A stretch of DNA of 64,000 nucleotides, from the IMG/VR virus record IMGVR_UViG_3300009011_000002, positions 124,001 to 188,000 of that record; one strand, 5' to 3'. The notes under the pieces were generated by a model. That model was not told the DNA's origin and searched no databases. It was given only the letters and a program-made list of their open reading frames with translations. Both the position numbers and the translations under genes were made by a program. The number at the start of each line of letters is the position of its first letter. Position 1 is the first letter of the stretch. This document shows, one piece after another, positions 1,695 through 58,319 of the stretch.

Positions 1695-1724
1695 GTAATA
1701 TAGGTTTCAAATCTACTGCAAATT
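1695..1724 (-). promoter_or_regulatory. phiKZ-type early (virion RNAP) promoter
   Basis: minus strand AATTTGCAGTAGATTTGAAACCTATATTAC; TATATTAC is the phiKZ early promoter core; motif recurs in intergenic gaps. Confidence 0.8.
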
Positions 1725-20892: not shown

Positions 20893-22548
20893 TTAACTGA
20901 TCTTCACAGCGCCGTGGCGTTCGTTGACCAGGATGCTGCTCAGCGTTGCCAGCAGTCGAGCCGTTTGAACACCGCCCTTCAGCGCAGTAATCGACGCATA
21001 AGCTGTGTCGTAAATACCCAGTGCTTCCGGAGTGCCAGTTTCACCCGTGGCCAAGTTGACCACCTCAATCTGGTCCAGCTCAGATGGCTTCGGTACCGCA
21101 GCCTCTTCGCCGACCAGGATCTTGTAACCCACTTTGGAAATTTCACGGATAGCCCCGATGATGTCGATCTGCCGAGGGGTGATCTCCTGACTCTTCTCAA
21201 TGTACTCTTCGTACAGCTGACGCTCAGCCGCCGCTGTAGCGCGAATCAGGGCGGTGTGTACCCCAGGCAGGATACCGTTCTCCAAAGCGCTCTGTACCGC
21301 ACGAGAGACATCCTCGAAGCGGTCTTTACGCTCACGGATCTCCGACAGGGTTTCACCACCCACCAGCACGGTCACCAGCTCACCGTTCAGAGCACGCAGA
21401 CGGGCTTCGTTGAAGCGAGCACGAGGGCTGAACTTCTCGGAGAGTTCGAAGGTTTCCAGCTGCTTCTTGATCTCACCGACCCGGGCTTCTACACGTTGCT
21501 TGGCAGCATCGCTGAGACCGGTGACCAAGGAACGACCCGAACCCAAGGTAACGTTCTCCATCACCAAGGGAATAACCTGGCTGGTAACATCTTCGCGGCT
21601 GGTGAACATCGGTACACCGAAGACAGTGGCAATGTCCTGCATCAGCGACGTACCCACCGAACCACCGAAGTTGGTCTGGAGACCGATGACTTTCGCGCCG
21701 TTATAGTAACTGCCCTTCACGGCGTTCTGCGCATTGATAGCCGCCAACACCGAGTTGTAATCGTTGTCGATGCTGCGAGTAATCAACAGGACGTGCGTGA
21801 TGATGCTGTTCTTGTACAGGTGTTCCATCAGGTCGGCCACGAACTTGACCATGCTGCGTGGGTCGTTGCCGCGGATGGAATCGTCCAGCACCACTGGATA
21901 GAACGTATCCAAGGACCAGTCTTCGCCGGTGCCGTTTGGCGAGAACAGCGGGTTGCTGTACACCATGCGCAGTGGGAGACCGTTGGCACGCTGGACGGTG
22001 TCTTTGCTGCTATTGGCTTCCTTGAACTCGATCTGCGGGTACGTACCCTTGCTGGCGTGGAAGATGTCGCAGATGATCTTGCTGAGCTCTTCGTCGTTGT
22101 TCGACGAGGTCAGCGCCAGCTTGTACAATTCTTCGCTGTCGGTGTTGACCGAGATGGTCGCCTTGGTCAGGTTGGCGATGATCATCTTGGTGTACTTGTC
22201 GATGAACTTGTGGTCCACGAACTTCGGGAACTTCCGGTAGAGGGTATAGAACTCTGCCGTCAGCATGGTGGTAGTGGTGGTACCGTCACCACATTCCACG
22301 TCAGTCTTGATTGCTGGTTCGATCATGACACGAGCAACGGCGTCTTCGATCGGGTCCTGGAACGAGATCGAACGGGCCACGGTGACACCGTCCTTGGTAA
22401 CGGACACTGAAGTCCCGGTACGAATAGCCGACAGCTGGCCATCCGGACCCATGGTAGCGACCACAGCACGACGAATCCGATCGACCACGCGTTCTACTAC
22501 AGCTTGGGTGTTTTCAATGGTCACGAGTTTGTCATTGTTGTACTGCAT
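20893..22548 (-). CDS. groEL: phage-encoded GroEL-like chaperonin
   Basis: TMGPDG, VTKDGVTVA, GDGTTT, VGGET..E..ERKDRFED, GI.PG, GIYD motifs; 551 aa. Confidence 0.95.
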   Translation of the reverse strand: MQYNNDKLVTIENTQAVVERVVDRIRRAVVATMGPDGQLSAIRTGTSVSVTKDGVTVARSISFQDPIEDAVARVMIEPAIKTDVECGDGTTTTTMLTAEFYTLYRKFPKFVDHKFIDKYTKMIIANLTKATISVNTDSEELYKLALTSSNNDEELSKIICDIFHASKGTYPQIEFKEANSSKDTVQRANGLPLRMVYSNPLFSPNGTGEDWSLDTFYPVVLDDSIRGNDPRSMVKFVADLMEHLYKNSIITHVLLITRSIDNDYNSVLAAINAQNAVKGSYYNGAKVIGLQTNFGGSVGTSLMQDIATVFGVPMFTSREDVTSQVIPLVMENVTLGSGRSLVTGLSDAAKQRVEARVGEIKKQLETFELSEKFSPRARFNEARLRALNGELVTVLVGGETLSEIRERKDRFEDVSRAVQSALENGILPGVHTALIRATAAAERQLYEEYIEKSQEITPRQIDIIGAIREISKVGYKILVGEEAAVPKPSELDQIEVVNLATGETGTPEALGIYDTAYASITALKGGVQTARLLATLSSILVNERHGAVKIS

Positions 22549-22584: not shown

Positions 22585-22614
22585 GTAATATAGGTTTGAC
22601 TTATTTTCGTTATT
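22585..22614 (-). promoter_or_regulatory. early promoter upstream of the chaperonin
   Basis: AAACCTATATTAC 37 nt upstream of the ATG. Confidence 0.8.
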
Positions 22615-32276: not shown

Positions 32277-33363
32277 GTTTCTTGGCTTTCTTCCGATACT
32301 TCCGCATCGCTTCCTTACAGGATTCGTCTGCGTTGATATAGAACTTGATACCCTCGACGATATCGTCCCAGGTAGGATAGAGCTTGCAGTTATCCATGAT
32401 GAACTTGACGAGCTTGCGATTGGTCAGGTCTTTACCCAACTTCTCGAGCTCTTGGTTCAACCGGCGGAGCCAGCTGTTGCTGAACCCGGAGTTGCTGTGG
32501 ATCTGACGGTGGCGTTTCGCAACGGCGCGCTTGCGGGCTTCCTCTTCTTCAGGCGTAGGGCCGTAGACGAAGTTGAAGTCTTCCAGGTTCACGGTCATGA
32601 TGTCGATCTCGCCGTCACCGAGAACTTCCATGGCCTTTTTGACCTGAGAAGGTGTCAGCCCCTTGCTCTTGAGGAACTCGCGGATCTGCCCCGTCTTAAC
32701 GATCTTGGCGGTGGCCTTACCGAAAAGATTTCCGTCGAACATTTCCTGACGTGCCTTGGAGGCAATCTGGATACCTGGCTCGCATAGAAGGTCGGTATCA
32801 CCAAGACTACCCGAGGGACGCTGGTGGCCGAGACGAACACCCAGCTTCAGATCGTGCAGCTCGGACAGCGCAGCATAAGAAACGTTGGTCAGGGTTACGG
32901 TACGCCCAGAAGGCAGCTTGAAGATACGAGGACCGATGTCACCCTCATTAATCTTTATGACCTCCCCCAACGTCGGAACTTTCAACCCGAGTTTAAGCCC
33001 ACTGAGAGGCAATTCCGTGTTATAAGCCTGTTGGTTTTTGGAGATTTCTTCCTCAGCTTTAGGTGGAGGAAGGACTACACCCAGAAACTCCAACCCGGTC
33101 ACATCACGTTTGCTTGTACGTCCTGCTTCGAGCAGCTTACTCCAGCCGGAGTTGAAAATACTGTTCTCGGCGTGGCTCTGGACGATCGCGTGGCTGAGGG
33201 CTTGCGTGAAGAACGAATCGTCACCGGTGAAGATTTTCTTAAGCTCTTCAACCGTGCTGTTCTCTACCAGTTTACGAAGTTCTTCCTTACGGTCGCCGGC
33301 AAATTGATCGAGCTTACCGGCTTCAAACATTGCCAGCAGTGCTTCTTTAAGATTGTTAGCCAT
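32254..33363 (-). CDS. hypothetical protein
   Basis: 369 aa ORF. Confidence 0.7.
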   Translation of the reverse strand: MANNLKEALLAMFEAGKLDQFAGDRKEELRKLVENSTVEELKKIFTGDDSFFTQALSHAIVQSHAENSIFNSGWSKLLEAGRTSKRDVTGLEFLGVVLPPPKAEEEISKNQQAYNTELPLSGLKLGLKVPTLGEVIKINEGDIGPRIFKLPSGRTVTLTNVSYAALSELHDLKLGVRLGHQRPSGSLGDTDLLCEPGIQIASKARQEMFDGNLFGKATAKIVKTGQIREFLKSKGLTPSQVKKAMEVLGDGEIDIMTVNLEDFNFVYGPTPEEEEARKRAVAKRHRQIHSNSGFSNSWLRRLNQELEKLGKDLTNRKLVKFIMDNCKLYPTWDDIVEGIKFYINADESCKEAMRKYRKKAKKLGKTIKQ

Positions 33364-33634
33364 TCTTCTGTTCCTTCAATTCTTCAATTCGGAGTTTGCA
33401 AGCAGCGAGGCTTGCCTTAGGGGAATAACGACGACGCAAACGGAACCACGTCACCCAAACCGGGTTAGGTTTACCGTTAGCCAGAGCGGGAGGAGGCTCT
33501 GGCATTTCTTTCAAACTGTCGTTGAAAGCATGGTGTGCTTCTTTGTAAGACACTCCCTTTTGTTGCATGTACGCTTGGACCCAGGTGTGATTAATCTCAC
33601 CTTTCTTGGAAATCAAAGGTGGTAGTGTGTTCAT
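33356..33634 (-). CDS. tandem two-WxxW-module protein
   Basis: PPL..INHTWVQAYMQQKGVSYKEA and PPAL..PNPVWVTWFRLRRRYSPKA. Confidence 0.7.
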   Translation of the reverse strand: MNTLPPLISKKGEINHTWVQAYMQQKGVSYKEAHHAFNDSLKEMPEPPPALANGKPNPVWVTWFRLRRRYSPKASLAACKLRIEELKEQKNG

Positions 33635-33650: not shown

Positions 33651-34265
33651 TTATACCGTCAGCGCATCGATTTCTTTACGCTGTTCTTCCAGTTCCGCAC
33701 CAAAAGCTTTGATGTACAAATCCGGATAACGAGCATAACCACCAGTGCCGAACTTTTCCTTCAGATGCTTGAGAGCACCTTCACGACGCTCAGCAAGGGT
33801 CATCTCAGGGTTGTGCTTTTCTCGGTACATCACAGCACGATAGCGCATCTGAGTAACCCGACCTGGCAACCCACGATCCGCCGAGTTGATCAGTTCAGCA
33901 AATCGATTACTGAACTCCCCCTTGAATGAAGCACGATGTTGCTGACAGCCCAGGTATACATTCCTGAGTTCTTCACCTTGAAGGTTGTTAACAATCAGCG
34001 GGTGGTCAGTGGTAACCAGCCACTCGTAGCTGAGGGTGTGGTGATTATTACGGCTCCACGCGAACATGTCGTGGAAGTAAGCGGCGAACAACATCCACTT
34101 AGGGTCGTAACCCAACCCTAGGCGTTGATCGATCACCATAGCGGTTTGGAACACTTCTTCGAAATGTTCTTTGCGATGAGCTTTGTCATTCAGTTCCCAA
34201 AGCTCAGAGAACGACTCGATAATTTGTTTACGCAGTTCGCCAATCTGTTCTGGGGTGGTCATCAT
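33651..34265 (-). CDS. HD-domain metal-dependent phosphohydrolase
   Basis: AH..EH..EV...AAYFHD...H...INSAD motif order. Confidence 0.85.
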   Translation of the reverse strand: MMTTPEQIGELRKQIIESFSELWELNDKAHRKEHFEEVFQTAMVIDQRLGLGYDPKWMLFAAYFHDMFAWSRNNHHTLSYEWLVTTDHPLIVNNLQGEELRNVYLGCQQHRASFKGEFSNRFAELINSADRGLPGRVTQMRYRAVMYREKHNPEMTLAERREGALKHLKEKFGTGGYARYPDLYIKAFGAELEEQRKEIDALTV

Positions 34266-34549
34266 GCGTTTCCTTCTTGTAAGAGTTTGAGTTTAGCCAA
34301 CCCGCATTTCTTTGCGATGTTGGTTGTTACGTTGTTGTGGATCCGATACCAGTGGACCCACCGCACACTGAGGAACTGACCGGTCTTCGAAAGCTTAGGC
34401 TCCGGCATAGCCTTGATCCGTTCGATATGTTGGAACCGAGCAGTTACAGGGGTACACCCATGTTTCTGTTGATACCACAGCTGCCACGCTGGATTGAACC
34501 CACCATTCCCATCAATGAGACTGGGTTCTTTTAATAGGACCTTCGGCAT
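34262..34549 (-). CDS. tandem two-WxxW-module protein
   Basis: EPSL..FNPAWQLWYQQKHGCTPVTA and EPKL..LSVRWVHWYRIHNNVTTNIA. Confidence 0.75.
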   Translation of the reverse strand: MPKVLLKEPSLIDGNGGFNPAWQLWYQQKHGCTPVTARFQHIERIKAMPEPKLSKTGQFLSVRWVHWYRIHNNVTTNIAKKCGLAKLKLLQEGNA

Positions 34550-34615: not shown

Positions 34616-34654
34616 AATACCGATGTATCGGGTTAATAGGTCGTATCAAAAAGA

Positions 34655-34699
34655 AATATAACCCCCTACTGCCTTTGTGGGGCAGTAGGGGGTTATATT
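34655..34699 (-). terminator. intrinsic terminator
   Basis: 19-bp perfect stem followed by a U-rich tract on the minus strand. Confidence 0.85.
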
Positions 34700-34709
34700 C
34701 GGTTACTCG

Positions 34710-35619: not shown

Positions 35620-36210
35620 TTATTCAGATGGCCCGCTGTTGTCACTGCCGCTACTACCGCCGTAGTCGTTGTCAGACCCACGAGGAGAACACCGGGGCGC
35701 GCTCAGAGGCTCTCCGGTGCCTAAATCAGGGCCGTATTGGTGATGGTGGTGGATATGGGTGACGTTGCCGCCATGACGTTTAGGAGGAGCTGGCGGAGGC
35801 CCTTTTGGAGGGATCTTCGGTAGGGGGTTGCGACGGCCAGGTTCTAATGGTGGAGCTGAAGCTCGTGGATACCCGCCAGCTTTACGAGTCTTCTCACCCA
35901 ACGGTGGTTGACTGATGCTGTCAATCGTTAAAACGATATCATCAACACTATAGGCTTCGATGAAATCTTTTTCACTCTTACCTGCATTACCTTCGAGTGC
36001 TTGCCATACTTCAAATGCCGAACGACCCAGTCTTTTACTACGCTCGAGCTTACGGATTTCTTTCTCGGCATCACGGAACTTCTTTTCGAACTCGTTAGCC
36101 CGACGAGTCTCACGACACCACATAACGAACGAACTGATTACTGCGATCCAGAACAACAGGAACAGAATAACAGCCGGCAACATAGCGGCGGGGTTTAAGT
36201 GGAACGTCAT
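35620..36210 (-). CDS. membrane protein with coiled coil, one tail-fibre repeat and Pro/His-rich tail
   Basis: N-terminal TM; GRSAFEVWQALEGNAGKSEKDFIEA; start MTFHL after AGGAG. Confidence 0.7.
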   Translation of the reverse strand: MTFHLNPAAMLPAVILFLLFWIAVISSFVMWCRETRRANEFEKKFRDAEKEIRKLERSKRLGRSAFEVWQALEGNAGKSEKDFIEAYSVDDIVLTIDSISQPPLGEKTRKAGGYPRASAPPLEPGRRNPLPKIPPKGPPPAPPKRHGGNVTHIHHHHQYGPDLGTGEPLSAPRCSPRGSDNDYGGSSGSDNSGPSE

Positions 36211-36212
36211 CA

Positions 36213-36500
36213 CTAGCTCCTGTATTGAAGGTACAAGAGAGCCCACGCAACAATGTGGCCTCCCAATGCAATCGAAACCCCCAAGACCTGCCACCGATTC
36301 TGTAATGGCCAGTGGCGGCGCATCCGTTGCCAGCGTGTGGCATTCGGTTGTACCGGGGGACGGTTATCAAGCATCATCAGGATATTGAACGAGTCAGTTT
36401 TGAAGTGCTCGTCCACCATCCGTTTAGCTTCCTCGAGGTTGCCAGGAACCGGATGGCTTTCGATGTTAGGTTCGCGGAACTTGAGAATCTTGGCTGTCAT
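36213..36500 (-). CDS. small membrane protein
   Basis: C-terminal TM segment. Confidence 0.6.
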   Translation of the reverse strand: MTAKILKFREPNIESHPVPGNLEEAKRMVDEHFKTDSFNILMMLDNRPPVQPNATRWQRMRRHWPLQNRWQVLGVSIALGGHIVAWALLYLQYRS

Positions 36501-37312: not shown

Positions 37313-37798
37313 TCACATACCGAGTCGCTTAATGGCTTCTTGCAACAACTGGGTGTCAAAGGTCTTGCCAGCGATCTTGCCATCGCGTGTCAAGGAAGCC
37401 GCCAGGATCTCGAGGTGCTGGGAGATGTCCTTGTTGGTCATGTCGGATGGCGCTGGGATAAATGTCTTAGCCAGTGGGTTGTCCAGCATGGCCCGGAGTT
37501 TATCCAGTTCCTTGGTGGCCATCTTCATGCCTTCACTGAGAGCACCAATTGCTTGGATGCCTTTGAGCATGCCTTCGAAATTAGCGGCGAAGTTGCTTCT
37601 AAGGTCCGCAGGTTTGATGGAGTCGGCGTGGACTTTTTCGAGCTTACGCATCCCTGCCCCAAGACGCAGGCACATGTTCAGCTGTTCGATTGCAGCAGTG
37701 CGGTATTCCCGACTGGTACCGTCGGTCACAGGCAGTGCCAACACCATACGTTTCAGTGCACCCACTTGCCGTGCGTAATCATCGAGATCTTTGATCAT
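37313..37798 (-). CDS. hypothetical helical protein
   Basis: 161 aa, AGGAGG RBS. Confidence 0.65.
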   Translation of the reverse strand: MIKDLDDYARQVGALKRMVLALPVTDGTSREYRTAAIEQLNMCLRLGAGMRKLEKVHADSIKPADLRSNFAANFEGMLKGIQAIGALSEGMKMATKELDKLRAMLDNPLAKTFIPAPSDMTNKDISQHLEILAASLTRDGKIAGKTFDTQLLQEAIKRLGM

Positions 37799-38426
37799 CG
37801 GGTTCTACGCCTCCTTTTTCAATGAAGTCCTTGCCTATATGGATGGCAGCGACCAGTGAGATGTCATAGTGGTCACGCGCCCACTTAACCCACTCGTAGT
37901 TAAGGCCGCATTGCATGGAACCACTGAGTTTAGGTTCGCCGGGACGGCGGGCCAGATAAGTCCCTTTGGCATTCCAACGTTTGAGGAATGTGTGGATAGG
38001 AGAACCAGGGTTTTCCCTGATGCTGATTTCCAACGGAGTTTTATCGACAAGGCGACGACCGCTCTTGAAAATCCCCATCAAATCCAGACTGCCGTCTTCA
38101 AGGAAGAACTGACTGATGTCTTTGAAGTTGCCCCTGCCACTGACCGAATCAAAACTGGCTTCCGCATCTTCGATGCAGCTGAAGTACTGGCCGTTAGGAG
38201 GCAATTGGATCCAGCACTCTTGAGGAATGGCTTTGATCACATCCTCCGCCGACAGGTACTTAGGGATCCCACCAAACACCGTGCTGAAGGTACCAGGGCG
38301 AAGTCCGCCGTTCAGCAACTTATCCAACGTTGGAAAACCAACACTGAGTTTTTCCAGATGTTCCTTGGGGACCGGCTCAAATTCCGGCATTTTCAATTTG
38401 AGCCGATCAAACAAATCTTTATCCAT
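37779..38426 (-). CDS. RadA/DnaB-like N-terminal stub fused to a WxxW module
   Basis: LSVGFPTLDKLLNGGLRPG without Walker A; C-terminal EPKL..LNYEWVKWARDHYDISLVAA. Confidence 0.7.
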   Translation of the reverse strand: MDKDLFDRLKLKMPEFEPVPKEHLEKLSVGFPTLDKLLNGGLRPGTFSTVFGGIPKYLSAEDVIKAIPQECWIQLPPNGQYFSCIEDAEASFDSVSGRGNFKDISQFFLEDGSLDLMGIFKSGRRLVDKTPLEISIRENPGSPIHTFLKRWNAKGTYLARRPGEPKLSGSMQCGLNYEWVKWARDHYDISLVAAIHIGKDFIEKGGVEPDDQRSR

Positions 38427-39165
38427 GTTCCATCACTCCAAAGGCTTCTTCACGTTGTGCCTTGCTCATCTTGCGCATTGCACGCTTTTTCTTGCGTTCT
38501 TCTTCCTCGCGTCTCTTTTCCTCTTTCTCCTTTTCGGACACGTCAATGGCGACGTACTTGGCGAGGTCTTCCTTGAGTTTCTTCTCATCCTCTTTACGCC
38601 AGATTTCCTTCAGTTCTTCGATGTGCTTTTTCGGCCAAATCTGCTCGATGTAGAACGAAATGCCCGAGAAGCCAAAGTCACGGAACAACACAATCCGGCC
38701 CTTGAACTCCGTACGACGGTTCTTCACCATCCAGGTCGCCAGTACTTCATCGACAATTTTGGCTTCTTGATCCTGGGCCCACAACTCGTTCTTGTTCCTG
38801 AGCCAGTTCTTGTTGGTGTCCAACGTCACTGGGTACAAGGTAGGACCGTCCATGATCATGCCGTGGTGACCGGCGTCCATGAACTCTTTCATGATGATCG
38901 GATAAGCTTCCATTTCCCGGAAGCAACGTTTCATCCACTTCACCGGATCACGGGTGTTTTCCAGTGTGTCGAACAGGCTGAGTTGGATGAACTCCGGATG
39001 CAGGTGGCGGATCTTGCGGGCCATCTGCAACAGCTTCTTCGGGTTGTCCGTCATGTTGTCACGGAACCAGGTCAGGATGTGGATCTCCTGATCAAACGGT
39101 TCCAGGTTCGGGTTGAACTCGTACGGGGTTGGGGCGCCTTTCTTTTTGCTGTGTGCTGCTTGCAT
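38419..39165 (-). CDS. hypothetical protein with charged C-terminal coiled coil
   Basis: 248 aa, AAGGA RBS. Confidence 0.7.
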   Translation of the reverse strand: MQAAHSKKKGAPTPYEFNPNLEPFDQEIHILTWFRDNMTDNPKKLLQMARKIRHLHPEFIQLSLFDTLENTRDPVKWMKRCFREMEAYPIIMKEFMDAGHHGMIMDGPTLYPVTLDTNKNWLRNKNELWAQDQEAKIVDEVLATWMVKNRRTEFKGRIVLFRDFGFSGISFYIEQIWPKKHIEELKEIWRKEDEKKLKEDLAKYVAIDVSEKEKEEKRREEEERKKKRAMRKMSKAQREEAFGVMEHG

Positions 39166-42656: not shown

Positions 42657-42686
42657 GTAATATAGGTTTAATAAAAACTAACACGG
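42657..42686 (-). promoter_or_regulatory. early promoter
   Basis: AAACCTATATTAC 39 nt upstream of the ATG. Confidence 0.8.
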
Positions 42687-42700
42687 TATCAAAAATAAAG

Positions 42701-42726
42701 CCTTAGGCGGAGCAATCCGCCTAAGG
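42701..42726 (-). terminator. intrinsic terminator
   Basis: 11-bp stem, 4-nt loop, U-rich tract on minus strand. Confidence 0.8.
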
Positions 42727-42734
42727 TATAACAC

Positions 42735-44216
42735 TTACTGGATGAGTTCCAGCTTACGGCTCAGTTCGATCTTCAGCGGGTTGCCGTTGTTCGGGATCAG
42801 GTTGTAGCGTTCCAGCTCTTCCGGCTTCTTCTCGCTGGACATGACGCGGTAAGCACCCTTGGTCCACGCCAGTGCGAAACTGCACGAGTGGACGTTACGG
42901 TACCAGTCGATCCATTCCTGGGACAGGGTGTGGACTGAGGTGGTGAGGTTGGGTTCTTTCGGGCCCTTGTCGATGAACTCTTCCAGGCTCTGCGTGAAGG
43001 TCTTCAGCGCGGTCATTGGATTGACTGGACGTTGTTTACCCAGCTGGACAATGACCATGTCTTCGGTGATCCGCTTGGCGTCGAGCCGCTTGGCTACCAG
43101 TTCGCCAAACAGCTGGTAGTATTCCGGACCGAAGTTAACCCAGTTACTACCACCGCCACCGAAGGTGTTTTGCAACGAGAAGTAATTCATTCCCATGGTG
43201 AGGTGGAACGAACGGAAGAGTGCGGCCAGGCGTTCGTCGTTGTAAGAACCGACAATCCGACGAAGGAGGTCTTCTTTCTCAAGAACCGGTTCGTTCTCGG
43301 CGCGGTTGTCGAGCACACGCTCGAAGGCTGCCAGGACCAGTTGTCGAGCAATAGGGAGTACTTCGTTCGGGTACTCCCAACTGCGCCCTTGTTCGCCGAT
43401 GATGACGAAGGTTTCATCCGAACGTTCCGCCCAGGTCTGCTGGATCCAGAACAGCATTTGCTTGAAGTTCATGCCAGCAACAATGCCCTTGAGCTTGGCG
43501 GTGACTTCCTTGCGTTTTTCTTCGGTGAGTTCAGTCACTTCTGGTTCCTTTTCGTTAATAGTTTGCTTCTTGGCCATTTCAAGAATGCGTTGCATGATAC
43601 CAGCCGCCACAGAGAGACTCGCGGGACCTTCGTAGCGGTACAATGCGCCGGTGACAACATCGAACTCGAAAGTGAAATCTTGTTTCGACTCGGTGGTCTC
43701 TAACCGGTAATTGAAAATGGTGCCTGGAGTGTCTCGGCTTTCGGTCACGTCCAACCGCCACCCAGCCTGGAGACCCTGAGAATCACCGTCGAGGTAAGCC
43801 CAGTTATGACGAATAAACAGCTTCGCCAGTTCCAAAGAGTGTTCCATTAACCTGCCTTGAGCTGCCGCCGAGTTGTTCAGCTTGTCAAGGATGTAGTTAT
43901 AAACCTCCGAGAAGACTTCGTACACATCACCAGGGCTGGTGCCGAAATCCAATGCAGTCAGACGGTCCCCTGCAAGGTTAGCCGATACTTCAAAGTCGCG
44001 GATAGGGACCCCTTCACCACGGCCGGAGCTGTACTTGAACCCGTAACCAGGCGTACCGGCGAAGTATTGCAACCGCCATTCACCGATGGTCAGCCCAGGG
44101 GAGTAACTGGACCAGTTCATGACCGCGAACACACCGGCCAGTTCTTTAATTTTGTGGGCCAAGTCGGCAGCTTGTTTCAGTTCCATGTCCTTACTCGTCA
44201 TCACGAACAACTCCAT
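42735..44216 (-). CDS. multidomain protein with C-terminal WxxW module
   Basis: 493 aa; two similar N-terminal domains (NW....G...WRL); EPNL..LSQEWIDWYRNVHSCSFALA. Confidence 0.75.
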   Translation of the reverse strand: MELFVMTSKDMELKQAADLAHKIKELAGVFAVMNWSSYSPGLTIGEWRLQYFAGTPGYGFKYSSGRGEGVPIRDFEVSANLAGDRLTALDFGTSPGDVYEVFSEVYNYILDKLNNSAAAQGRLMEHSLELAKLFIRHNWAYLDGDSQGLQAGWRLDVTESRDTPGTIFNYRLETTESKQDFTFEFDVVTGALYRYEGPASLSVAAGIMQRILEMAKKQTINEKEPEVTELTEEKRKEVTAKLKGIVAGMNFKQMLFWIQQTWAERSDETFVIIGEQGRSWEYPNEVLPIARQLVLAAFERVLDNRAENEPVLEKEDLLRRIVGSYNDERLAALFRSFHLTMGMNYFSLQNTFGGGGSNWVNFGPEYYQLFGELVAKRLDAKRITEDMVIVQLGKQRPVNPMTALKTFTQSLEEFIDKGPKEPNLTTSVHTLSQEWIDWYRNVHSCSFALAWTKGAYRVMSSEKKPEELERYNLIPNNGNPLKIELSRKLELIQ

Positions 44217-44921: not shown

Positions 44922-46442
44922 TTACATGGCGCCGATCATGCCCGAGACAACGGAAGGATCCACATCCAGGGCGGATGGTTCAGCGGCATTACCCAGCAGG
45001 TTGTTGCCTGGCAGCAGCGAACGACCCACTGCCGAACCCACAGCACCCAGGGCCAGGCCCGCGGTACCAGCAGCGACGTAACGACCGAACTGGCTTTCGA
45101 TGTTGCTGTCGATCAGCTCACCGGCGAAGAAGCTGCCGATGGCGCCCGCGACGGTACCCAGTGCCGAACCCACGGTCAGGCCACCGCGTGCTGCCATTTC
45201 CATGCCACCGCCCACGACTGCTGCGCCGACGCCGATCCAGGAGGAGCGGACGCCTTCGTCGCGTTCGTTCATCAGGCTGAAGCGGGACTTGGCTGCGGCG
45301 GCGCCCTCGGTCAGGTCTTCGATCTTGAACTGGGTCAGCAGGTAGCCCATGTAGGACTTGGTGAACTCCTGCTCGCTTTCCAGGAAGTTGTAGATGCGGT
45401 GGTCGCTGTCCATGTCAGCAGGTGCCGACGCGGAGAAGGTCGCCCAGCGCGCCATCACTTCTGGTTGGCCTTCCATGAAGTTCAGGAAGACTTGGGTGCG
45501 CAGGCCGCCGTCGATCATGCCCTTGGAGCTCAGGAACATGATGAAGCCGTCGAAGTCTTTGGCAGCGTTGTTGTTGTTGGCGGTGGTGTGAGCGTTGGCG
45601 TTGGTCATGGTGTCTTCCTCGGTATTCGCAGATTGGGTTTGGTTGGTTTGTTGTGCGGTGTTTTGAGCTAGCTGGTCGCGACGCTCTTGGGAGATGTTAC
45701 GTTTCGAGATCAGTTCGTGTTGGGCATTCATCACGATCTCGATGATGTCTGCCTCGGCGGTAAAGCCGGTGTATTCGATGGTGGTGTCATTGACCCTGTA
45801 GCCAGTAAGGTTCACCACCTCGGGGCACAGTTCTTTGATCCGTTCTTGCTGGTGTGCCACGATCTTTTCTTCCAGCGTCAACCAGCTGAAGTGGTGACCG
45901 GTCGGTGGGAAGATAGGTTCCGAGGATCCGTTTTCACGGCTCAGTTCGGTATCCGCATCACGGCGTCCGCCCACGACAATGTCGGCATTCACCGGGGTAT
46001 CGTCTTTGAGGGTCTCGTGGTCCTCGATGACTTTAACCACCACGCCTTTATCGCCAGGAAGATCAGTCATCTTGAACTTCGGTTCAGGATGTTCTTGGGA
46101 GGCAGCCATATCAACAGTCGCTGAGCCGTGAAGCTCAGCGACTGGGATAGGGTTAGCTGGGATCGAGGCGGGTGCTGCAGCAGCTGGGGCTACCGGCTCT
46201 TCGAGCACGATGGTCTTGGCTGCTTTGATCTGGGACATCGAATACTTCGTGCCCAGTTTGTGGTTCACGTTCGTCAGGACTTCAGTGCGAGACTGTTGCC
46301 GTACGAACTTGGGGTCGAGGAGCTTGGCCTTGATGGCGCTCTTCTGCTCTTCGACGGTGCCGCCCTTTTCACGCATTCCTTTAACAATGCCAACGATCGT
46401 CTCGATGGCAAACTCAGGAGTGGGGAATTGATCGTCAGCCAT
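44922..46442 (-). CDS. early protein with C-terminal glycine-zipper membrane domain
   Basis: 506 aa; G/A-rich hydrophobic helices; possible internal start at 45608. Confidence 0.75.
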   Translation of the reverse strand: MADDQFPTPEFAIETIVGIVKGMREKGGTVEEQKSAIKAKLLDPKFVRQQSRTEVLTNVNHKLGTKYSMSQIKAAKTIVLEEPVAPAAAAPASIPANPIPVAELHGSATVDMAASQEHPEPKFKMTDLPGDKGVVVKVIEDHETLKDDTPVNADIVVGGRRDADTELSRENGSSEPIFPPTGHHFSWLTLEEKIVAHQQERIKELCPEVVNLTGYRVNDTTIEYTGFTAEADIIEIVMNAQHELISKRNISQERRDQLAQNTAQQTNQTQSANTEEDTMTNANAHTTANNNNAAKDFDGFIMFLSSKGMIDGGLRTQVFLNFMEGQPEVMARWATFSASAPADMDSDHRIYNFLESEQEFTKSYMGYLLTQFKIEDLTEGAAAAKSRFSLMNERDEGVRSSWIGVGAAVVGGGMEMAARGGLTVGSALGTVAGAIGSFFAGELIDSNIESQFGRYVAAGTAGLALGAVGSAVGRSLLPGNNLLGNAAEPSALDVDPSVVSGMIGAM

Positions 46443-46515: not shown

Positions 46516-46545
46516 GTAATACAGGTTTGAAAACAACTGTAACTT
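46516..46545 (-). promoter_or_regulatory. early promoter
   Basis: AAGTTACAGTTGTTTTCAAACCTGTATTAC. Confidence 0.7.
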
Positions 46546-46890: not shown

Positions 46891-47331
46891 TTACCCCTTA
46901 GGCTTCTTCCAGCCGTAGTCAGCTTTCCAGAACACCAGTTCTTTACCTGGCCAATCAGAGAACACACTGTTCAACGCCATGATGTCGTATTCATCGAAAT
47001 CATAGGCAATCGAAATATGGGGGAGTGGGGTCTCGTAGGCATGCTGGTAACCGGCATCCCGCAAGCGGCGGAACTCTTCGTTGAGGTCCGGGCTGGTGAG
47101 GTGGAAGACTACACCATCACCGAGGGGTTCCAGCTTGGTGACGAATGCACGGAACTCACGCTCCGGGTGCAGTTCAGCCAGTGGGCGGTCGATACCACGG
47201 TCGTCGAAGATTATGGTGGAGTGCAGGTCATGCTTGGGGATCTGTACCCCACATTCGCCCAGGAGCTTGTAGATCTCCATGATGAACTCGGGTTTCAGTT
47301 CTGCGGCTACGTAGCTGTAGTCACGTTCCAT
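46891..47331 (-). CDS. acb1: Acb1/T4 gp57B-like 2H phosphoesterase (anti-CBASS nuclease)
   Basis: YVAA, LHSTI and H.Y...PHISIAY motifs, 146 aa, C-terminal Trp, matching T4 gp57B/Acb1 layout. Confidence 0.8.
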   Translation of the reverse strand: MERDYSYVAAELKPEFIMEIYKLLGECGVQIPKHDLHSTIIFDDRGIDRPLAELHPEREFRAFVTKLEPLGDGVVFHLTSPDLNEEFRRLRDAGYQHAYETPLPHISIAYDFDEYDIMALNSVFSDWPGKELVFWKADYGWKKPKG

Positions 47332-55824: not shown

Positions 55825-55854
55825 GTAATATAGGTTTATTAAATTACTACGGTG
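55825..55854 (-). promoter_or_regulatory. early promoter abutting the end of the SbcC-like gene
   Basis: AAACCTATATTAC at 55825-55837. Confidence 0.8.
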
Positions 55855-58319
55855 TTCTGGTTAACCTCCCCGGTGAGGGTAAGTCCTTCGTAACGCAAAG
55901 CCACGATGTTCGGCTTGTCGAACACACTGTACTGGCTAACGTAGTGAGAGACCAAGAAAAGTTGTCGGGCATCTGTACGCTGCGTGTATTCGCGGATGAA
56001 GTTAAAGAATCGCGTCCGTTTGATCTCATCCAAATAAGGCCCCACCTCATCCATAATCAGGGGGAACGGGAACGGGTGATACGGTGCCAAAACGAACCGC
56101 CACACCCAGTCAAGGATATCGATCTCACCACCACTGCAATCCGCGATGTCTGGAGAAGGAGAATAGTCGCCGGTCACTACAGGGAACTTGTAGGTCAGGT
56201 CACCGTTCTCTTTACCACAGTGCTTCACGTAGAGCGGGGTGTTCCAAATGTCCTTGATAATCACGTTAGCATTGCCACATACGGTCTTGATGAAGTCCAT
56301 CATCAGTTTGCCCAGCAATCCCTTATTGGGGCACAGACCGTTCATCCACACTTCTACAATCTTCAACCGACGCTTCAAGCGTTCGATATCCGACGAGATT
56401 GAATCGACCACCGCCGACAACGATTTGTTCTTGATAATCGAAGTCAGGATGTGTTCCTTATCCACCGACAACTCGTGGATACGTGTATCAACCGATTGAC
56501 GGAGGGTTACCTTACTCTGGTTCCCCAAGCCCTGGACAACTTCCTTACGCAGTTGTTCTAACCGCAACAGGTCGTCGTTATAAGACGTGATGGTTTTGAG
56601 TTGGCGTTGTAACCCTTCCAGACGTTGCTTGTGCACACGGATCAAACTGTTCTGAGTGATGAGCTCTTTCTCAGTGTGAGCCACATGGTTCGCAATATCC
56701 AAGACCTTGTTCTTGTCTAAGACGTTTAAACGCGCGTGTAGCACGCGTTTCTCACCTTCCAGTAGTCCGAGTTGGTCGTTGAGCTTTTCACGCTCACAGT
56801 AGGCTTGCAGAGCGTTACAGAGCCGCGCATTGGTGACCTTGCCTACTTCAAACTCTTTGATCAACTCTGGCAAGATGCGGACGTGGTTATTCTCCCGAAC
56901 CATGGTAAACAACTGGTTCATGGAGCTATACCATTCTGCGTCATTGTCGATCAGCAGTTTGAGACGACTTTGTTCTTTCTCCAGTTTCTCAATCTGGTTC
57001 AGAACACCCTCGTAACTCTTCTGGATCTTCTCGGCATCACCCGGTTGCACACCCCGCTTGAACTGGTGAGTACAGTCAGGGCATTCGATCAGGTCCATGT
57101 TCTGGATATGCTCCAGGTCATGTTTAAGACCTTGCGAAGTGAGGGTCAAGTTACGAATCTGAACGGTGTTCTGTTCATACGTCGTCAAGTAACCCTTATA
57201 GGTAGTGCCTGTCAGTCCTGCATCACTGGCAACAGTGACACGGTGGAGGTAAGACATAAAGTGATCGGTGATTCCCCGCAGACCTGTCAGATCGGCAGAT
57301 GGGTCTTCGAACACCGGGTAACGTTCCAGCGTCAAATCCCATTCGGCTAACTGATTGACAATCCGGAGTTCTTCCGCCTGTACTGTCTTCGCTTGGTTTT
57401 CGAGCAGTTCGGGGTCCTTGAGGAACTCTTCCATGCCATCCAAGAAGCCAGCGTTGTCGCTGATGATGCCCGACAACACAGCTGCTTGTTCCTGATGGTA
57501 GTCGATAATGTCTTCGGCTGTTTCAATTGCTGAACGAAGTTCAGGCTCTGTCAGGAAGAACCCACTCACCTTGTTCACAGCCAACTGATCCGCTAACCAC
57601 GTAAACCGCTGGATCTTCTCTTGCAGTTCGCCATCAACGGTAATACCTTCCAACTGACCGCGTACCAACAAGGATTGCTTGAGGTCCACATCGATCAGCT
57701 TGATGCGCTGTTCCAGTTGTTCAATGCCGCACTCGTTGATCGCAATCAGCTTACGGTTCTCTTCGGCAAACCGTTGGGCTTGGTTCTTGATCGCCGCGCG
57801 GAGTTCGTTACGTTCCGTCTTAAGCTTGTTATAGCGACTCATGGCGTATTCCGTATCGTTTGGATACAGTTCCATGAGAATGTCTTTACGACGTGCTGGT
57901 GACATGGCAGAGAAGCGGTCGGTGATACGAATACCACCCAAGAACTTCAGGATATTCAAACTGGCCTTGAGGTGGTTCTCGACCAATTCCTTCTGTACGG
58001 TGTACGTACCCCCGGTGTTCAGTTCTTTACCGACTTCATCACCTTGTTCGTACACTTTGAAACTGTGGCCGGTGCCCGTGTGGGTATGCGAATCCAACAC
58101 GTACAGTCTGCCGTCGATAAACCATTCCGTCTTCTTACGGCCATCTTTGTAGTTGGCGTTCTCAGGCGGGAAGGGATGGACTTCTTTCAGAATACTGGTT
58201 TTACCCGAACCGTTAGCAGAGATGAAAAGGTTTACCAGTTCATCTGTATCCAGTTCTACTTTATGGATATTGCTGCTTAACAGAGGGATATAATTCTCTA
58301 ATGTCAGTTTGAGCAACAT
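55839..58319 (-). CDS. sbcC: SbcC/Rad50-like SMC ATPase
   Basis: Walker A NGSGKT, coiled coils, CPDC zinc hook, CSGGE signature, LIMDE Walker B, VSH. Confidence 0.92.
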   Translation of the reverse strand: MLLKLTLENYIPLLSSNIHKVELDTDELVNLFISANGSGKTSILKEVHPFPPENANYKDGRKKTEWFIDGRLYVLDSHTHTGTGHSFKVYEQGDEVGKELNTGGTYTVQKELVENHLKASLNILKFLGGIRITDRFSAMSPARRKDILMELYPNDTEYAMSRYNKLKTERNELRAAIKNQAQRFAEENRKLIAINECGIEQLEQRIKLIDVDLKQSLLVRGQLEGITVDGELQEKIQRFTWLADQLAVNKVSGFFLTEPELRSAIETAEDIIDYHQEQAAVLSGIISDNAGFLDGMEEFLKDPELLENQAKTVQAEELRIVNQLAEWDLTLERYPVFEDPSADLTGLRGITDHFMSYLHRVTVASDAGLTGTTYKGYLTTYEQNTVQIRNLTLTSQGLKHDLEHIQNMDLIECPDCTHQFKRGVQPGDAEKIQKSYEGVLNQIEKLEKEQSRLKLLIDNDAEWYSSMNQLFTMVRENNHVRILPELIKEFEVGKVTNARLCNALQAYCEREKLNDQLGLLEGEKRVLHARLNVLDKNKVLDIANHVAHTEKELITQNSLIRVHKQRLEGLQRQLKTITSYNDDLLRLEQLRKEVVQGLGNQSKVTLRQSVDTRIHELSVDKEHILTSIIKNKSLSAVVDSISSDIERLKRRLKIVEVWMNGLCPNKGLLGKLMMDFIKTVCGNANVIIKDIWNTPLYVKHCGKENGDLTYKFPVVTGDYSPSPDIADCSGGEIDILDWVWRFVLAPYHPFPFPLIMDEVGPYLDEIKRTRFFNFIREYTQRTDARQLFLVSHYVSQYSVFDKPNIVALRYEGLTLTGEVNQNTVVI

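What the first reader, a model, noticed from the sequence alone, without database searches (positions are those of the whole stretch)
38268..38348. RadA/DnaB/KaiC-type N-terminal stub that stops at Walker A, fused to a WxxW module
Seen: LSVGFPTLDKLLNGGLRPGTFSTVFGG followed by IPKYLS. Knowledge: RecA-superfamily ATPases start with hxTGhxxLDxhLxGGLxxGxhxxhxGxxGxGKT. Here similarity ends before GKT and no Walker B follows. The same protein ends in a WxxW module. Inference: a non-catalytic fragment that could poison or mimic a host helicase/recombinase interface.
Basis: partly seen in the sequence, partly recalled or inferred. Interest (0 to 1): 0.6.

Follow-up and report, generated by a model that had tools for sequence, protein, structure and literature searches.

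The report
Jumbo-phage orphan protein with RecA-like motif
A small, intact gene in what looks like an early operon of an uncultivated giant phage carries a 30-residue stretch resembling the lead-in to the ATP site of RecA/DnaB/KaiC enzymes, but the stretch occurs only in two close relatives, is only marginally above chance, and the conserved part is an unrelated tryptophan-rich tail of unknown function.

Summary
Window 38268-38348 (-) encodes residues 27-53 of an intact 215-aa ORF (37779-38426, -). These residues fit the RecA-superfamily pre-Walker-A signature. There is no Walker A or Walker B, and no continuation in another frame.

The similarity beats composition-matched chance (0 of 20,000 shuffles; hhalign P 2e-5, probability 77%). 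It is only about 12-16 bits over 30 residues, stops at G53, and is marginal for a genome scan.

The gene is not a broken ATPase. Its 84%-identical relative is also 215 aa, and dN/dS is 0.17 overall and 0.10 in the stub.

The family has only six members, all at the same syntenic position in EL-related jumbo phages. What they share is the C-terminal ~85-aa W-x-W-[LV]-K-W-A-R-D module. Three shorter members lack the RecA-like signature and one has the C-terminal module alone. A neighbour-gene tree places the long form among short forms.

The gene sits in a ~17-gene orphan operon behind an EL-type putative early promoter, a few kb from an Acb1-like gene.

Best reading: a non-enzymatic early accessory protein with a conserved C-terminal core and a fast-changing N-terminal extension. 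Whether the stub comes from an ATPase, and whether it mimics a helicase or recombinase interface, is untested.

The parts
37779..38426 (-). Intact 215-aa ORF (P0001), the protein that carries the finding
   Evidence: A GGAG lies 9 nt upstream of the ATG (read). The start MDKxL is conserved in P0002, P0003 and P0007. dN/dS against the 84%-identical homologue is 0.17.
38364..38426 (-). Residues 1-21, short conserved N-terminal leader MDKxLFxxIxxKMPxFxP
   Evidence: Shared by P0001, P0002, P0003 and P0007, and partly by P0004. No non-synonymous change against P0002.
38262..38357 (-). Residues 24-55, the RecA-superfamily pre-Walker-A-like signature (the stub)
   Evidence: dN/dS is 0.10. Present only in P0001 and, weakened, in P0002.
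38250..38273 (-). Residues 52-59, GGIPKYLS, at the place where a P-loop would sit; no GK[ST]
   Evidence: Read directly from the sequence. Motif scan. Viterbi alignment to jumbo-phage RecA, with low confidence beyond G53.
38055..38258 (-). Residues 57-124, middle region largely specific to P0001 and P0002; about 60 residues are missing in the short family members
   Evidence: Alignments. No RecA signal. dN/dS is 0.12.
37803..38054 (-). Residues 125-208, C-terminal module conserved across the family (ENxGSPIHTF ... GEPxLxG ... CGLN-W/Y-x-W-[LV]-K-W-A-R-D-x-Y-x-ISL-x-AA ... G-x-x-F)
   Evidence: 52% identity to P0003 and P0004, and 54% to P0005. 22 invariant columns. It is the only part present in L006. 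No Pfam, PHROG or NCBIfam match. It is the only region with pLDDT 60-70, modelled as two helices.
37881..37892 (-).
   Evidence: In relatives it reads W-[EA]-W-L-K-W.
38419..39165 (-). Upstream 248-aa gene whose stop overlaps the target's start by 8 nt; a homologue of Pseudomonas phage EL gp129
   Evidence: The gene calls abut or overlap by 8-20 nt in four of the five related loci; L006 is the exception, with a called gap. The family is aligned. 42% identity to EL gp129, E 9e-48.
37313..37798 (-). Downstream 161-aa gene that overlaps the target's end by 20 nt
   Evidence: Homologues found in L002 and L005.
42658..42669 (-). EL-type (putative early, virion-RNAP) promoter motif AAACCTATATTA(C) at the head of the operon
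   Evidence: The EL consensus WTTTYAAACCTACATTATY and the phiKZ motif TATATTAC are listed in PMC7058600 Table 2. PMC7598289 reports that such motifs mark early operons.
42701..42726 (-). Terminator-like hairpin just upstream of that promoter; upper limit of the transcription unit
34654..34700 (-). Terminator-like hairpin with a 20-bp stem; probable end of the ~8-kb transcription unit

Best explanation
P0001 is an intact, selected, non-enzymatic accessory protein of an uncultivated clade of EL-related jumbo phages. It is encoded in the middle of an ~8-kb operon of about 17 orphan genes that starts at an EL/phiKZ-type putative early promoter.

The part under family-wide constraint is the C-terminal ~85-residue Trp-rich module. 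It has an invariant W-x-x-W-A-R-D-x-Y-x-I-S-L-x-A-A core and is modelled as two helices. The N-terminal part is a fast-changing extension. It is absent in one phage and runs to about 60, 90 or 125 residues in the others.

The RecA/DnaB/KaiC-like signature lies inside this extension. It covers about 30 residues, ends exactly where a P-loop should begin, and occurs only in the two closest relatives. It is not part of a working or recently broken ATPase.

Inferred, not shown: the protein acts by binding. The C-terminal module would engage a conserved partner, and the variable extension would modulate or retarget that binding early in infection. Whether the 30 residues descend from a RecA-superfamily gene (relic or captured fragment) or are a convergent or chance match is about even on the present evidence.
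For: Intact and selected:
- The ORF is 215 aa, and so is its 84%-identical relative.
- dN/dS is 0.17 overall, 0.10 in the stub, 0.12 in the middle and 0.28 in the C-terminal module.

Not an ATPase:
- No Walker A or B, and nothing in the other frames.
- No Pfam family matches the full protein.
- NCBIfam scores are 10-13 bits against cut-offs of 248-499.

Family anatomy:
- An exhaustive phmmer search of 1.84 billion representatives finds 4 true relatives, and a profile search adds one more.
- Only the C-terminal module is conserved in all of them.
- The L006 copy is the C-terminal module alone.
- Synteny is conserved in all five related loci.
- The neighbour-gene tree places window+L002 as sister to the short-form L003 (support 94/97).

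Stub as a real motif. It is limited to 30 residues, and it weakens when the whole family is used (probability 16%).

Probable early operon: with PMC7058600 and PMC7598289. An Acb1-like gene lies at 46972-47313.
Against: - No partner or activity is shown. The binding or adaptor role is inference from architecture only.
- The one complex prediction run (upstream protein with the C-terminal module) gave no answer.
- Structure predictions are of low confidence (pLDDT 33 and 41).
- The stub and middle region have lower dN/dS than the C-terminal module. In the P0001/P0002 lineage the extension is therefore strongly constrained and may carry the main function there.
- Early timing rests on a promoter motif, not on transcript data.
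Confidence: 0.55

Rival explanations
1. Chance or convergent resemblance. The 30 residues only look like the RecA-superfamily lead-in. They arose within a hypervariable linker and have no evolutionary or functional link to ATPases.
For: - Scores are only 10-16 bits with library E-values of 0.01-0.26.
- Equally weak hits to unrelated families appear in neighbouring orphan proteins and against streptokinase in the PDB.
- No signal beyond G53.
- The GG turn, nearly invariant in the RecA superfamily from general knowledge, is already changed to DG in the 84%-identical relative, whose score drops to 5.7 bits.
- The signature is absent from the short family members.
- The long form is nested among short forms.
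- No donor-like sequence exists among 1.84 billion representatives.
Against: - 0 of 20,000 shuffles reach the observed score.
- The ORF is the top hit of the whole phage genome both for a RecA HMM (E 0.0087) and, after the real helicase, for phrog_19 (E 0.005).
- All annotated weak hits in four libraries, and the only three tblastn hits, fall in one superfamily and in register with the segment just before Walker A.
- hhalign probability is 77%.
Confidence: 0.45
2. True descent without the poison function. The extension is a relic or captured fragment of a RecA-superfamily gene (UvsX/RecA-like or DnaB-like) that lost its P-loop and core. It now serves only as a structural or binding segment.
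For: - The convergent superfamily-specific hits.
- The only tblastn hits are jumbo-phage UvsX/RecA proteins.
- A Viterbi alignment stays colinear through GGIPKYLS and places DAEASFD opposite the RecA D-x-E-G-S-x-D, with similar spacing.
- Named ESM-Atlas feature hits and structure hits for residues 15-128 are all RecA, KaiC or DnaB families.
- Strong purifying selection on the stub.
- Degenerate RecA-like domains kept as interaction modules have precedent, for example the BcsE N-terminal domain (PMC7439463).
Against: - The colinear extension has no statistical support.
- Atlas scores are at noise level (0.81-0.85; TM 0.36-0.39).
- There is no similarity to the phage's own divergent DnaB.
- The family profile as a whole weakens the signal.
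- No relative retains more of an ATPase.
Confidence: 0.35
3. The stub is a non-catalytic mimic of a RecA-family subunit interface that docks onto and poisons a host (or defence-system) helicase or recombinase early in infection.
For: - Location in a putative early operon of orphan genes, near an Acb1-like anti-defence gene.
- Purifying selection on the stub.
- Lineage-specific variation of the extension, as expected for host-directed proteins.
Against: - No binding evidence of any kind, and the host is unknown.
- From general structural knowledge, this segment is largely buried against the ATPase core rather than being a free-standing interface element. Known polymerisation motifs (the RecA N-terminal helix, the Rad51 FxxA motif, the DnaB linker helix) lie upstream of it.
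- Most family members lack the stub.
Confidence: 0.08
4. Simple pseudogene: a decayed or frameshifted ATPase gene.
For: Only the abrupt end of the similarity at the P-loop.
Against: - The frame is intact and the same length in a relative with dS 0.56, and dN/dS is 0.17.
- No Walker A continuation in other frames.
- Start codon, ribosome-binding site and gene overlaps are conserved.
- No relative has a full-length ATPase at this position.
Confidence: 0.02

Closest known systems
RecA-superfamily ATPases (KaiC, RadA/RadB/Rad51, RecA/UvsX, DnaB): the segment just before Walker A
   Same: Residues 24-55 match the consensus S-x-G-h-x-x-L-D-x-h-L-x-G-G-h-x-x-G-x-h-x-x-h-x-G in register with the model positions that precede the P-loop.
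   Different: No GK[ST], no Walker B and no detectable core. All scores are far below the family cut-offs. The protein is 215 aa, and its conserved part is unrelated to this superfamily.
Jumbo-phage UvsX/RecA (Pseudomonas phage PaBG gp116; phage NCTB RecA)
   Same: These are the only tblastn hits in the phage collection. Pairwise BLASTP gives E 3e-6 and 7e-7 over the lead-in region.
   Different: They are ~500-aa Pfam RecA proteins with P-loops GGEQSCKS and GPEQSAKS (read). The database-level E-value is only 2-5. The phage in the window has no RecA family match at all.
Divergent DnaB-like ATPase (Pfam PF20307) of the same phage, at G000:C1:217511-219043, outside the window
   Same: It belongs to the same superfamily, and its lead-in reads GGLRRGKFYLF against GGLRPGTFSTVF.
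   Different: The pairwise similarity is not significant (E 0.24-0.31), so the stub is not a recent copy of the phage's own helicase.
Degenerate RecA-like domains kept as interaction modules, for example the BcsE N-terminal domain
   Same: Walker A has been lost, and a proposed non-catalytic role in oligomerisation or binding remains (PMC7439463, read).
   Different: The BcsE domain is predicted to keep the whole RecA-like fold of about 217 residues. Here only about 30 residues resemble the family.
Pseudomonas phage EL gp133-like small Trp-rich proteins (two paralogues in the window, at 34262-34549 and 33356-33634)
   Same: There is a possible distant relationship with the C-terminal module through the shared (G/M)-P/E-E-P-x-L ... 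W-[VI]-x-W-x-R ... A ... G pattern. hhalign gives probability 53%, P 1.4e-4, over 41 columns, and the HMM gives E 0.019.
   Different: The support is weak. Those proteins are ~90-aa stand-alone proteins of unknown function, with no informative PHROG match.

Membership tests
RecA-superfamily ATPase (RecA/RadA/Rad51/DnaB/KaiC) | Pre-Walker-A signature (TG-h-x-x-LD-x-h-L-x-GG-h-x-x-G-x-hhhh-x-G) | tested here: met
   Residues 24-55 align in register. The signal is weak (10-16 bits) but exceeds all 20,000 shuffles.
RecA-superfamily ATPase (RecA/RadA/Rad51/DnaB/KaiC) | Walker A P-loop GxxxxGK[ST] | tested here: not met
   The sequence at that place is GGIPKYLS. Neither a strict nor a relaxed motif occurs anywhere in the protein or adjoining the stub in other frames.
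RecA-superfamily ATPase (RecA/RadA/Rad51/DnaB/KaiC) | Walker B (hhhh[DE]) and catalytic Glu | tested here: not met
   There is no hhhh[DE] run. The DAE at residues 92-94 is colinear with the RecA D-x-E only in a zero-confidence alignment.
RecA-superfamily ATPase (RecA/RadA/Rad51/DnaB/KaiC) | Family HMM score at or above the curated cut-off | tested here: not met
   No Pfam match for the full protein. Rad51 scores 11 bits against a cut-off of 22 with residues 1-70. NCBIfam scores are 10.6-13.3 bits against cut-offs of 248-499.
RecA-superfamily ATPase (RecA/RadA/Rad51/DnaB/KaiC) | RecA-like alpha/beta core fold | tested here: inconclusive
   AlphaFold2 gives pLDDT 33 for the single sequence and 41 with 6 sequences. 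Foldseek against the PDB finds nothing. The ESM-Atlas model has pLDDT 0.41, and its RecA-family neighbours have TM of only 0.36-0.39.
Pseudogene of an ATPase | Disrupted frame, relaxed selection, or full-length ATPase orthologues at the same position | tested here: not met
   The frame is intact and the same length in P0002. dN/dS is 0.17. All five syntenic loci encode short proteins or the module alone.
P0001 family (orphan of EL-related jumbo phages) | C-terminal W-x-W-[LV]-K-W-A-R-D-x-Y-x-ISL-x-AA module, located directly downstream of the gp129-like gene | tested here: met
EL gp133-like small Trp-rich proteins | Profile-profile similarity of the C-terminal module | tested here: inconclusive
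   hhalign probability 53%, P 1.4e-4. HMM E 0.019 within the genome.

The most novel reading that the evidence does not exclude
An early jumbo-phage protein has acquired, by capture or retention, just the pre-P-loop element of a RecA-family ATPase. It uses that element, under strong purifying selection, to insert into or cap a host or defence-system RecA-fold oligomer (DnaB, RadA/Sms, RecA, or a KaiC/HerA-like defence ATPase). The conserved Trp-rich C-terminal module provides the effector or anchoring function. This would be a minimal subunit-mimic inhibitor.
Probability: 0.08. Interest if true: 0.7.

Novelty: new member of a known kind. Interest (0 to 1): 0.27.

Why it matters
If the stub is only a motif-level resemblance, this is one more lineage-restricted orphan in what looks like an early operon of a phiKZ/EL-type jumbo phage. 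It is useful mainly as an annotation: an intact gene, not a broken ATPase, with a newly delineated C-terminal module and a variable extension.

If the stub really derives from a RecA-fold ATPase and is used for binding, it would be an unusually small example of enzyme-fragment co-option by a phage. It would also give a handle on which host replication, recombination or defence ATPase these uncultivated phages target.

The case also shows that a near-perfect short consensus match can be statistically marginal and phylogenetically shallow.

Tried and rejected
- Pfam, PHROG and NCBIfam scans of the full protein, the C-terminal module and all family members gave nothing for the C-terminal module and only sub-threshold RecA-superfamily hits for the N-terminus.
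- PDB sequence searches, with the single sequence and with a profile, returned only noise-level streptokinase hits.
- AlphaFold2 gave pLDDT 33 for the single sequence and 41 with the 6-sequence alignment. Foldseek against the PDB found no match with E below 4.
- ESM-Atlas feature and structure look-alikes were RecA-family-flavoured but at noise-level scores. I treat them as a lead only.
- The search for related loci in IMG/VR (twice) and in metagenome contigs found only the window's own record. A family profile search of the EL, vB_PQ1, PaBG and NCTB genomes found nothing.
- A frameshift or alternative-frame Walker A is rejected.
- A paralogous copy of the phage's own DnaB-like helicase is rejected.
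- Extension of the RecA similarity past the P-loop (the DAE motif) has no support.
- The C-terminal module shows no similarity to RecA.
- A complex prediction of the upstream gp129-like protein (residues 1-200) with the C-terminal module returned no answer. It is not evidence for or against binding.
- An hhalign shuffle test timed out and was replaced by an HMMER shuffle test.
- The sigma-70 promoter scan was not enriched over shuffles.

Full report
**What is there.** The finding's coordinates (38268-38348) lie on the minus strand inside an intact ORF at window 37779-38426, which encodes 215 aa (P0001).
- A GGAG lies 9 nt upstream of the ATG.
- The stop codon of the upstream 248-aa gene overlaps the start by 8 nt, and the downstream 161-aa gene overlaps the end by 20 nt.
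- The window is part of a 226,773-bp virus record with direct terminal repeats, which makes it a jumbo phage.
- The phage encodes a GroEL-like chaperonin, an NAD-dependent ligase that is 40% identical to Pseudomonas phage EL gp122, and a gene order colinear with EL gp115-gp139. It is therefore a distant, uncultivated relative of EL.

**Is the motif more than chance?**
- Full-length scans give only phrog_19 (DnaB-like helicase) at E 0.07.
- With residues 1-70 the annotated hits are all RecA-superfamily families aligned to the segment just before Walker A. NCBIfam gives KaiC_arch_4, RadB, RadA, RAD51 and phage_DnaB at E 0.05-0.2. PHROGs gives phrog_19 at E 0.0096, the UvsX-like phrog_97 at E 0.18 and the DNA-repair phrog_8337 at E 0.39, plus one function-unknown family (phrog_31279, E 0.29). 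Pfam gives Rad51 at E 0.26.
- tblastn against 50,697 phage genomes returns only three hits in two phages, all annotated UvsX or RecA in jumbo phages PaBG and NCTB (E 2-5). The pairwise E-values are 3e-6 and 7e-7.
- I built an HMM from 53 jumbo-phage RecA proteins. Among 2,602 six-frame ORFs of this phage the target ranks first (E 0.0087, 11.9 bits, residues 24-53), and the next ORF has E 1.5.
- None of 20,000 composition-preserving shuffles of residues 15-130 reaches the observed 13.1 bits; the maximum is 7.0.
- hhalign of the two-sequence profile against the RecA alignment gives probability 77% and P 2e-5 over 31 columns.

The resemblance is therefore real as a motif. It is also short and weak.
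- Residues 54-130 alone score no better than shuffles. A tempting colinear DAEASFD opposite the RecA D-x-E-G-S-x-D appears only in a zero-confidence Viterbi extension.
- Neighbouring orphan proteins collect E 0.1-0.16 hits to unrelated PHROGs.
- Residues 43-103 hit streptokinase at E 0.07-0.17 in the PDB.
- For a scan over a whole window the signal is marginal.

**Not an ATPase and not a pseudogene.**
- No strict or relaxed Walker A and no Walker B run occur in the protein, and the other two frames hold no P-loop adjoining the stub.
- The closest relative, P0002 from a 223.6-kb contig, is also 215 aa, 84% identical and gap-free.
- Nei-Gojobori dN/dS is 0.17 overall (dS 0.56). By region it is 0.10 in the stub, 0.12 in the middle and 0.28 in the C-terminal module.
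- The phage has a genuine replicative helicase elsewhere, a 510-aa protein with Pfam divDNAB at E 4e-108, located at G000:C1:217511-219043. It is not significantly similar to the stub.
- No Pfam RecA, AAA_25, DnaB_C or KaiC-type match exists anywhere in the genome.

**The family and what is conserved.**
- An exhaustive phmmer search of 1.84 billion representatives finds only P0002, P0003 (154 aa), P0004 (180 aa) and P0005 (a 58-aa gene call), plus one spurious repeat protein.
- A profile word search adds P0007 (148 aa).
- IMG/VR, JGI metagenome contigs and the EL, vB_PQ1, PaBG and NCTB genomes add nothing.
- All members sit at the same syntenic position, directly after the homologue of the 248-aa gene. 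That upstream gene is itself a homologue of EL gp129 (42% identity, E 9e-48). EL has an unrelated gene in the next slot.
- The alignment shows 22 invariant columns, all in the C-terminal ~60 residues, and a nearly constant C-terminal ~85-residue module. Its consensus runs ENxGSPIHTF, then GEPxLxG, then CGLN-W-x-W-L-K-W-A-R-D-x-Y-x-ISL-x-AA.
- There is also a short N-terminal leader, MDKxLF..MPxFxP.
- The segment between the two is hypervariable. P0003 and P0007 lack about 60 residues that P0001 and P0002 have. P0004 has a different insert. In L006 the open frame holds only the module, about 78 aa counted from MKLTVHEN.
- The short members give no RecA-like hit. P0002's stub has NGG changed to EDG and drops to 5.7 bits. 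With the whole family as the query, the hhalign probability falls to 16%.
- A maximum-likelihood tree of the upstream neighbour, including EL gp129, places window+L002 as sister to the short-form L003 (support 94/97). Deeper nodes are unresolved. The long, stub-bearing form is therefore most simply read as derived.

**The C-terminal module.**
- It has no Pfam, PHROG or NCBIfam match in any member and no similarity to RecA.
- It is the only region AlphaFold2 models with some confidence: pLDDT 60-70, with helices at 177-187 and 191-203.
- A genome-wide HMM search found no clear paralogue. The best other ORF (E 0.019) is one of two EL gp133-like ~90-aa Trp-rich proteins lying 3.5-4.5 kb downstream.
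- Profile-profile comparison with that family gives probability 53%, P 1.4e-4, over 41 columns that share the EP-x-L ... W-[VI]-x-W-x-R pattern. This is a lead, not a result.

**Context.**
- On the minus strand, a terminator-like hairpin (42726-42701) is followed by TTATTAAACCTATATTACTAT (motif at 42669-42658). About 17 tightly packed orphan genes run from there to a 20-bp-stem terminator at 34700-34654.
- The motif AAACCT[A/G]TATTAC occurs five times in the window, always on the minus strand and upstream of genes. The chance expectation is 0.25.
- It matches the published EL promoter consensus WTTTYAAACCTACATTATY and contains the phiKZ motif TATATTAC (PMC7058600, Table 2).
- In RNAP-encoding jumbo phages such motifs mark early operons read by the virion RNA polymerase (PMC7598289).
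- An Acb1-like 2H phosphodiesterase (PF23474, E 7.6e-14) lies at 46972-47313. It is the homologue of EL gp126.
- The gene is therefore most probably an early accessory gene. This is inferred from sequence, not measured.

**Interpretation.**

Shown:
- an intact gene under purifying selection;
- no ATPase motifs;
- a real but 30-residue RecA-superfamily-like signature restricted to two close relatives;
- a family core that is an uncharacterised Trp-rich C-terminal module;
- a conserved syntenic position next to the gp129-like gene, usually with overlapping gene calls;
- a position behind an EL-type promoter.

Inferred:
- The protein acts by binding rather than catalysis.
- The C-terminal module is the constant functional unit, and the N-terminal extension is a lineage-specific modifier.

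The descent and mimic readings overlap in part, and both are compatible with the architecture described above.

A precedent for non-catalytic degenerate RecA-like domains exists in the BcsE N-terminal domain (PMC7439463), but that domain keeps the whole fold.

**Limits.**
- Structure predictions were poor.
- The single complex prediction gave no answer.
- The host is unknown.

Noticed in passing
window 1696-1707, 22586-22597, 42658-42669, 46517-46528, 55826-55837 (all on the minus strand): The motif AAACCT[A/G]TATTAC recurs five times upstream of minus-strand genes (0.25 expected by chance). It matches the published EL promoter consensus and contains the phiKZ motif TATATTAC. These are probably early, virion-RNAP promoters.
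   Followed up: partly
window 46972-47313 (-): An Acb1-like 2H phosphodiesterase (PF23474, E 7.6e-14), an anti-CBASS-type gene. It is the homologue of EL gp126, which is annotated 'RNA ligase'. Acb1 genes also occur upstream of the family in L005 and L006.
   Followed up: partly
window 38419-39165 (-): A 248-aa protein whose stop overlaps the target's start and which is a homologue of EL gp129. It has strongly conserved GHHGMIM and GRIVLFRDFGFSG motifs and matches no known family. In three of six phages it carries a K/E-rich tail of about 45 residues.
   Followed up: partly
window 34262-34549 (-) and 33356-33634 (-): Two paralogous ~90-aa Trp-rich proteins homologous to EL gp133. Their HMM also gives weak hits to several other small ORFs in this region, and to the C-terminal end of the 493-aa protein at 42735-44216. 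This suggests a recurrent W-x-x-W / PEPxL module in the early region.
   Followed up: partly
window 20893-22548 (-): A GroEL-like chaperonin of 551 aa. Only its N-terminal ~150 residues match Cpn60_TCP1 (E 3.9e-21). An EL-type promoter lies directly upstream. It is reminiscent of the phage EL chaperonin.
   Followed up: no
window 55839-58319 (-): An 826-aa protein with a weak SMC_N match (E 9e-9, below the Pfam cut-off). It is 49% identical to EL gp118, which is annotated hypothetical.
   Followed up: no
window 44922-46442 (-): A 506-aa protein with a weak match to a PHROG annotated as RNA polymerase beta subunit (phrog_3295, E 1.7e-5). It may be a fragment subunit of a jumbo-phage multisubunit RNAP.
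   Followed up: no
G000:C1:217511-219043 (+), outside the window (L010:1234-2766): The phage's replicative helicase, a 510-aa divergent DnaB-like ATPase (PF20307, E 4e-108). No RecA/UvsX family protein is detectable anywhere in the genome.
   Followed up: yes
window 35620-36294 (-): A 224-aa ORF with a predicted N-terminal hydrophobic helix and a Pro-, Gly- and His-rich tail (HIHHHHQ) in the same operon. Only 60% identical in L002.
   Followed up: no
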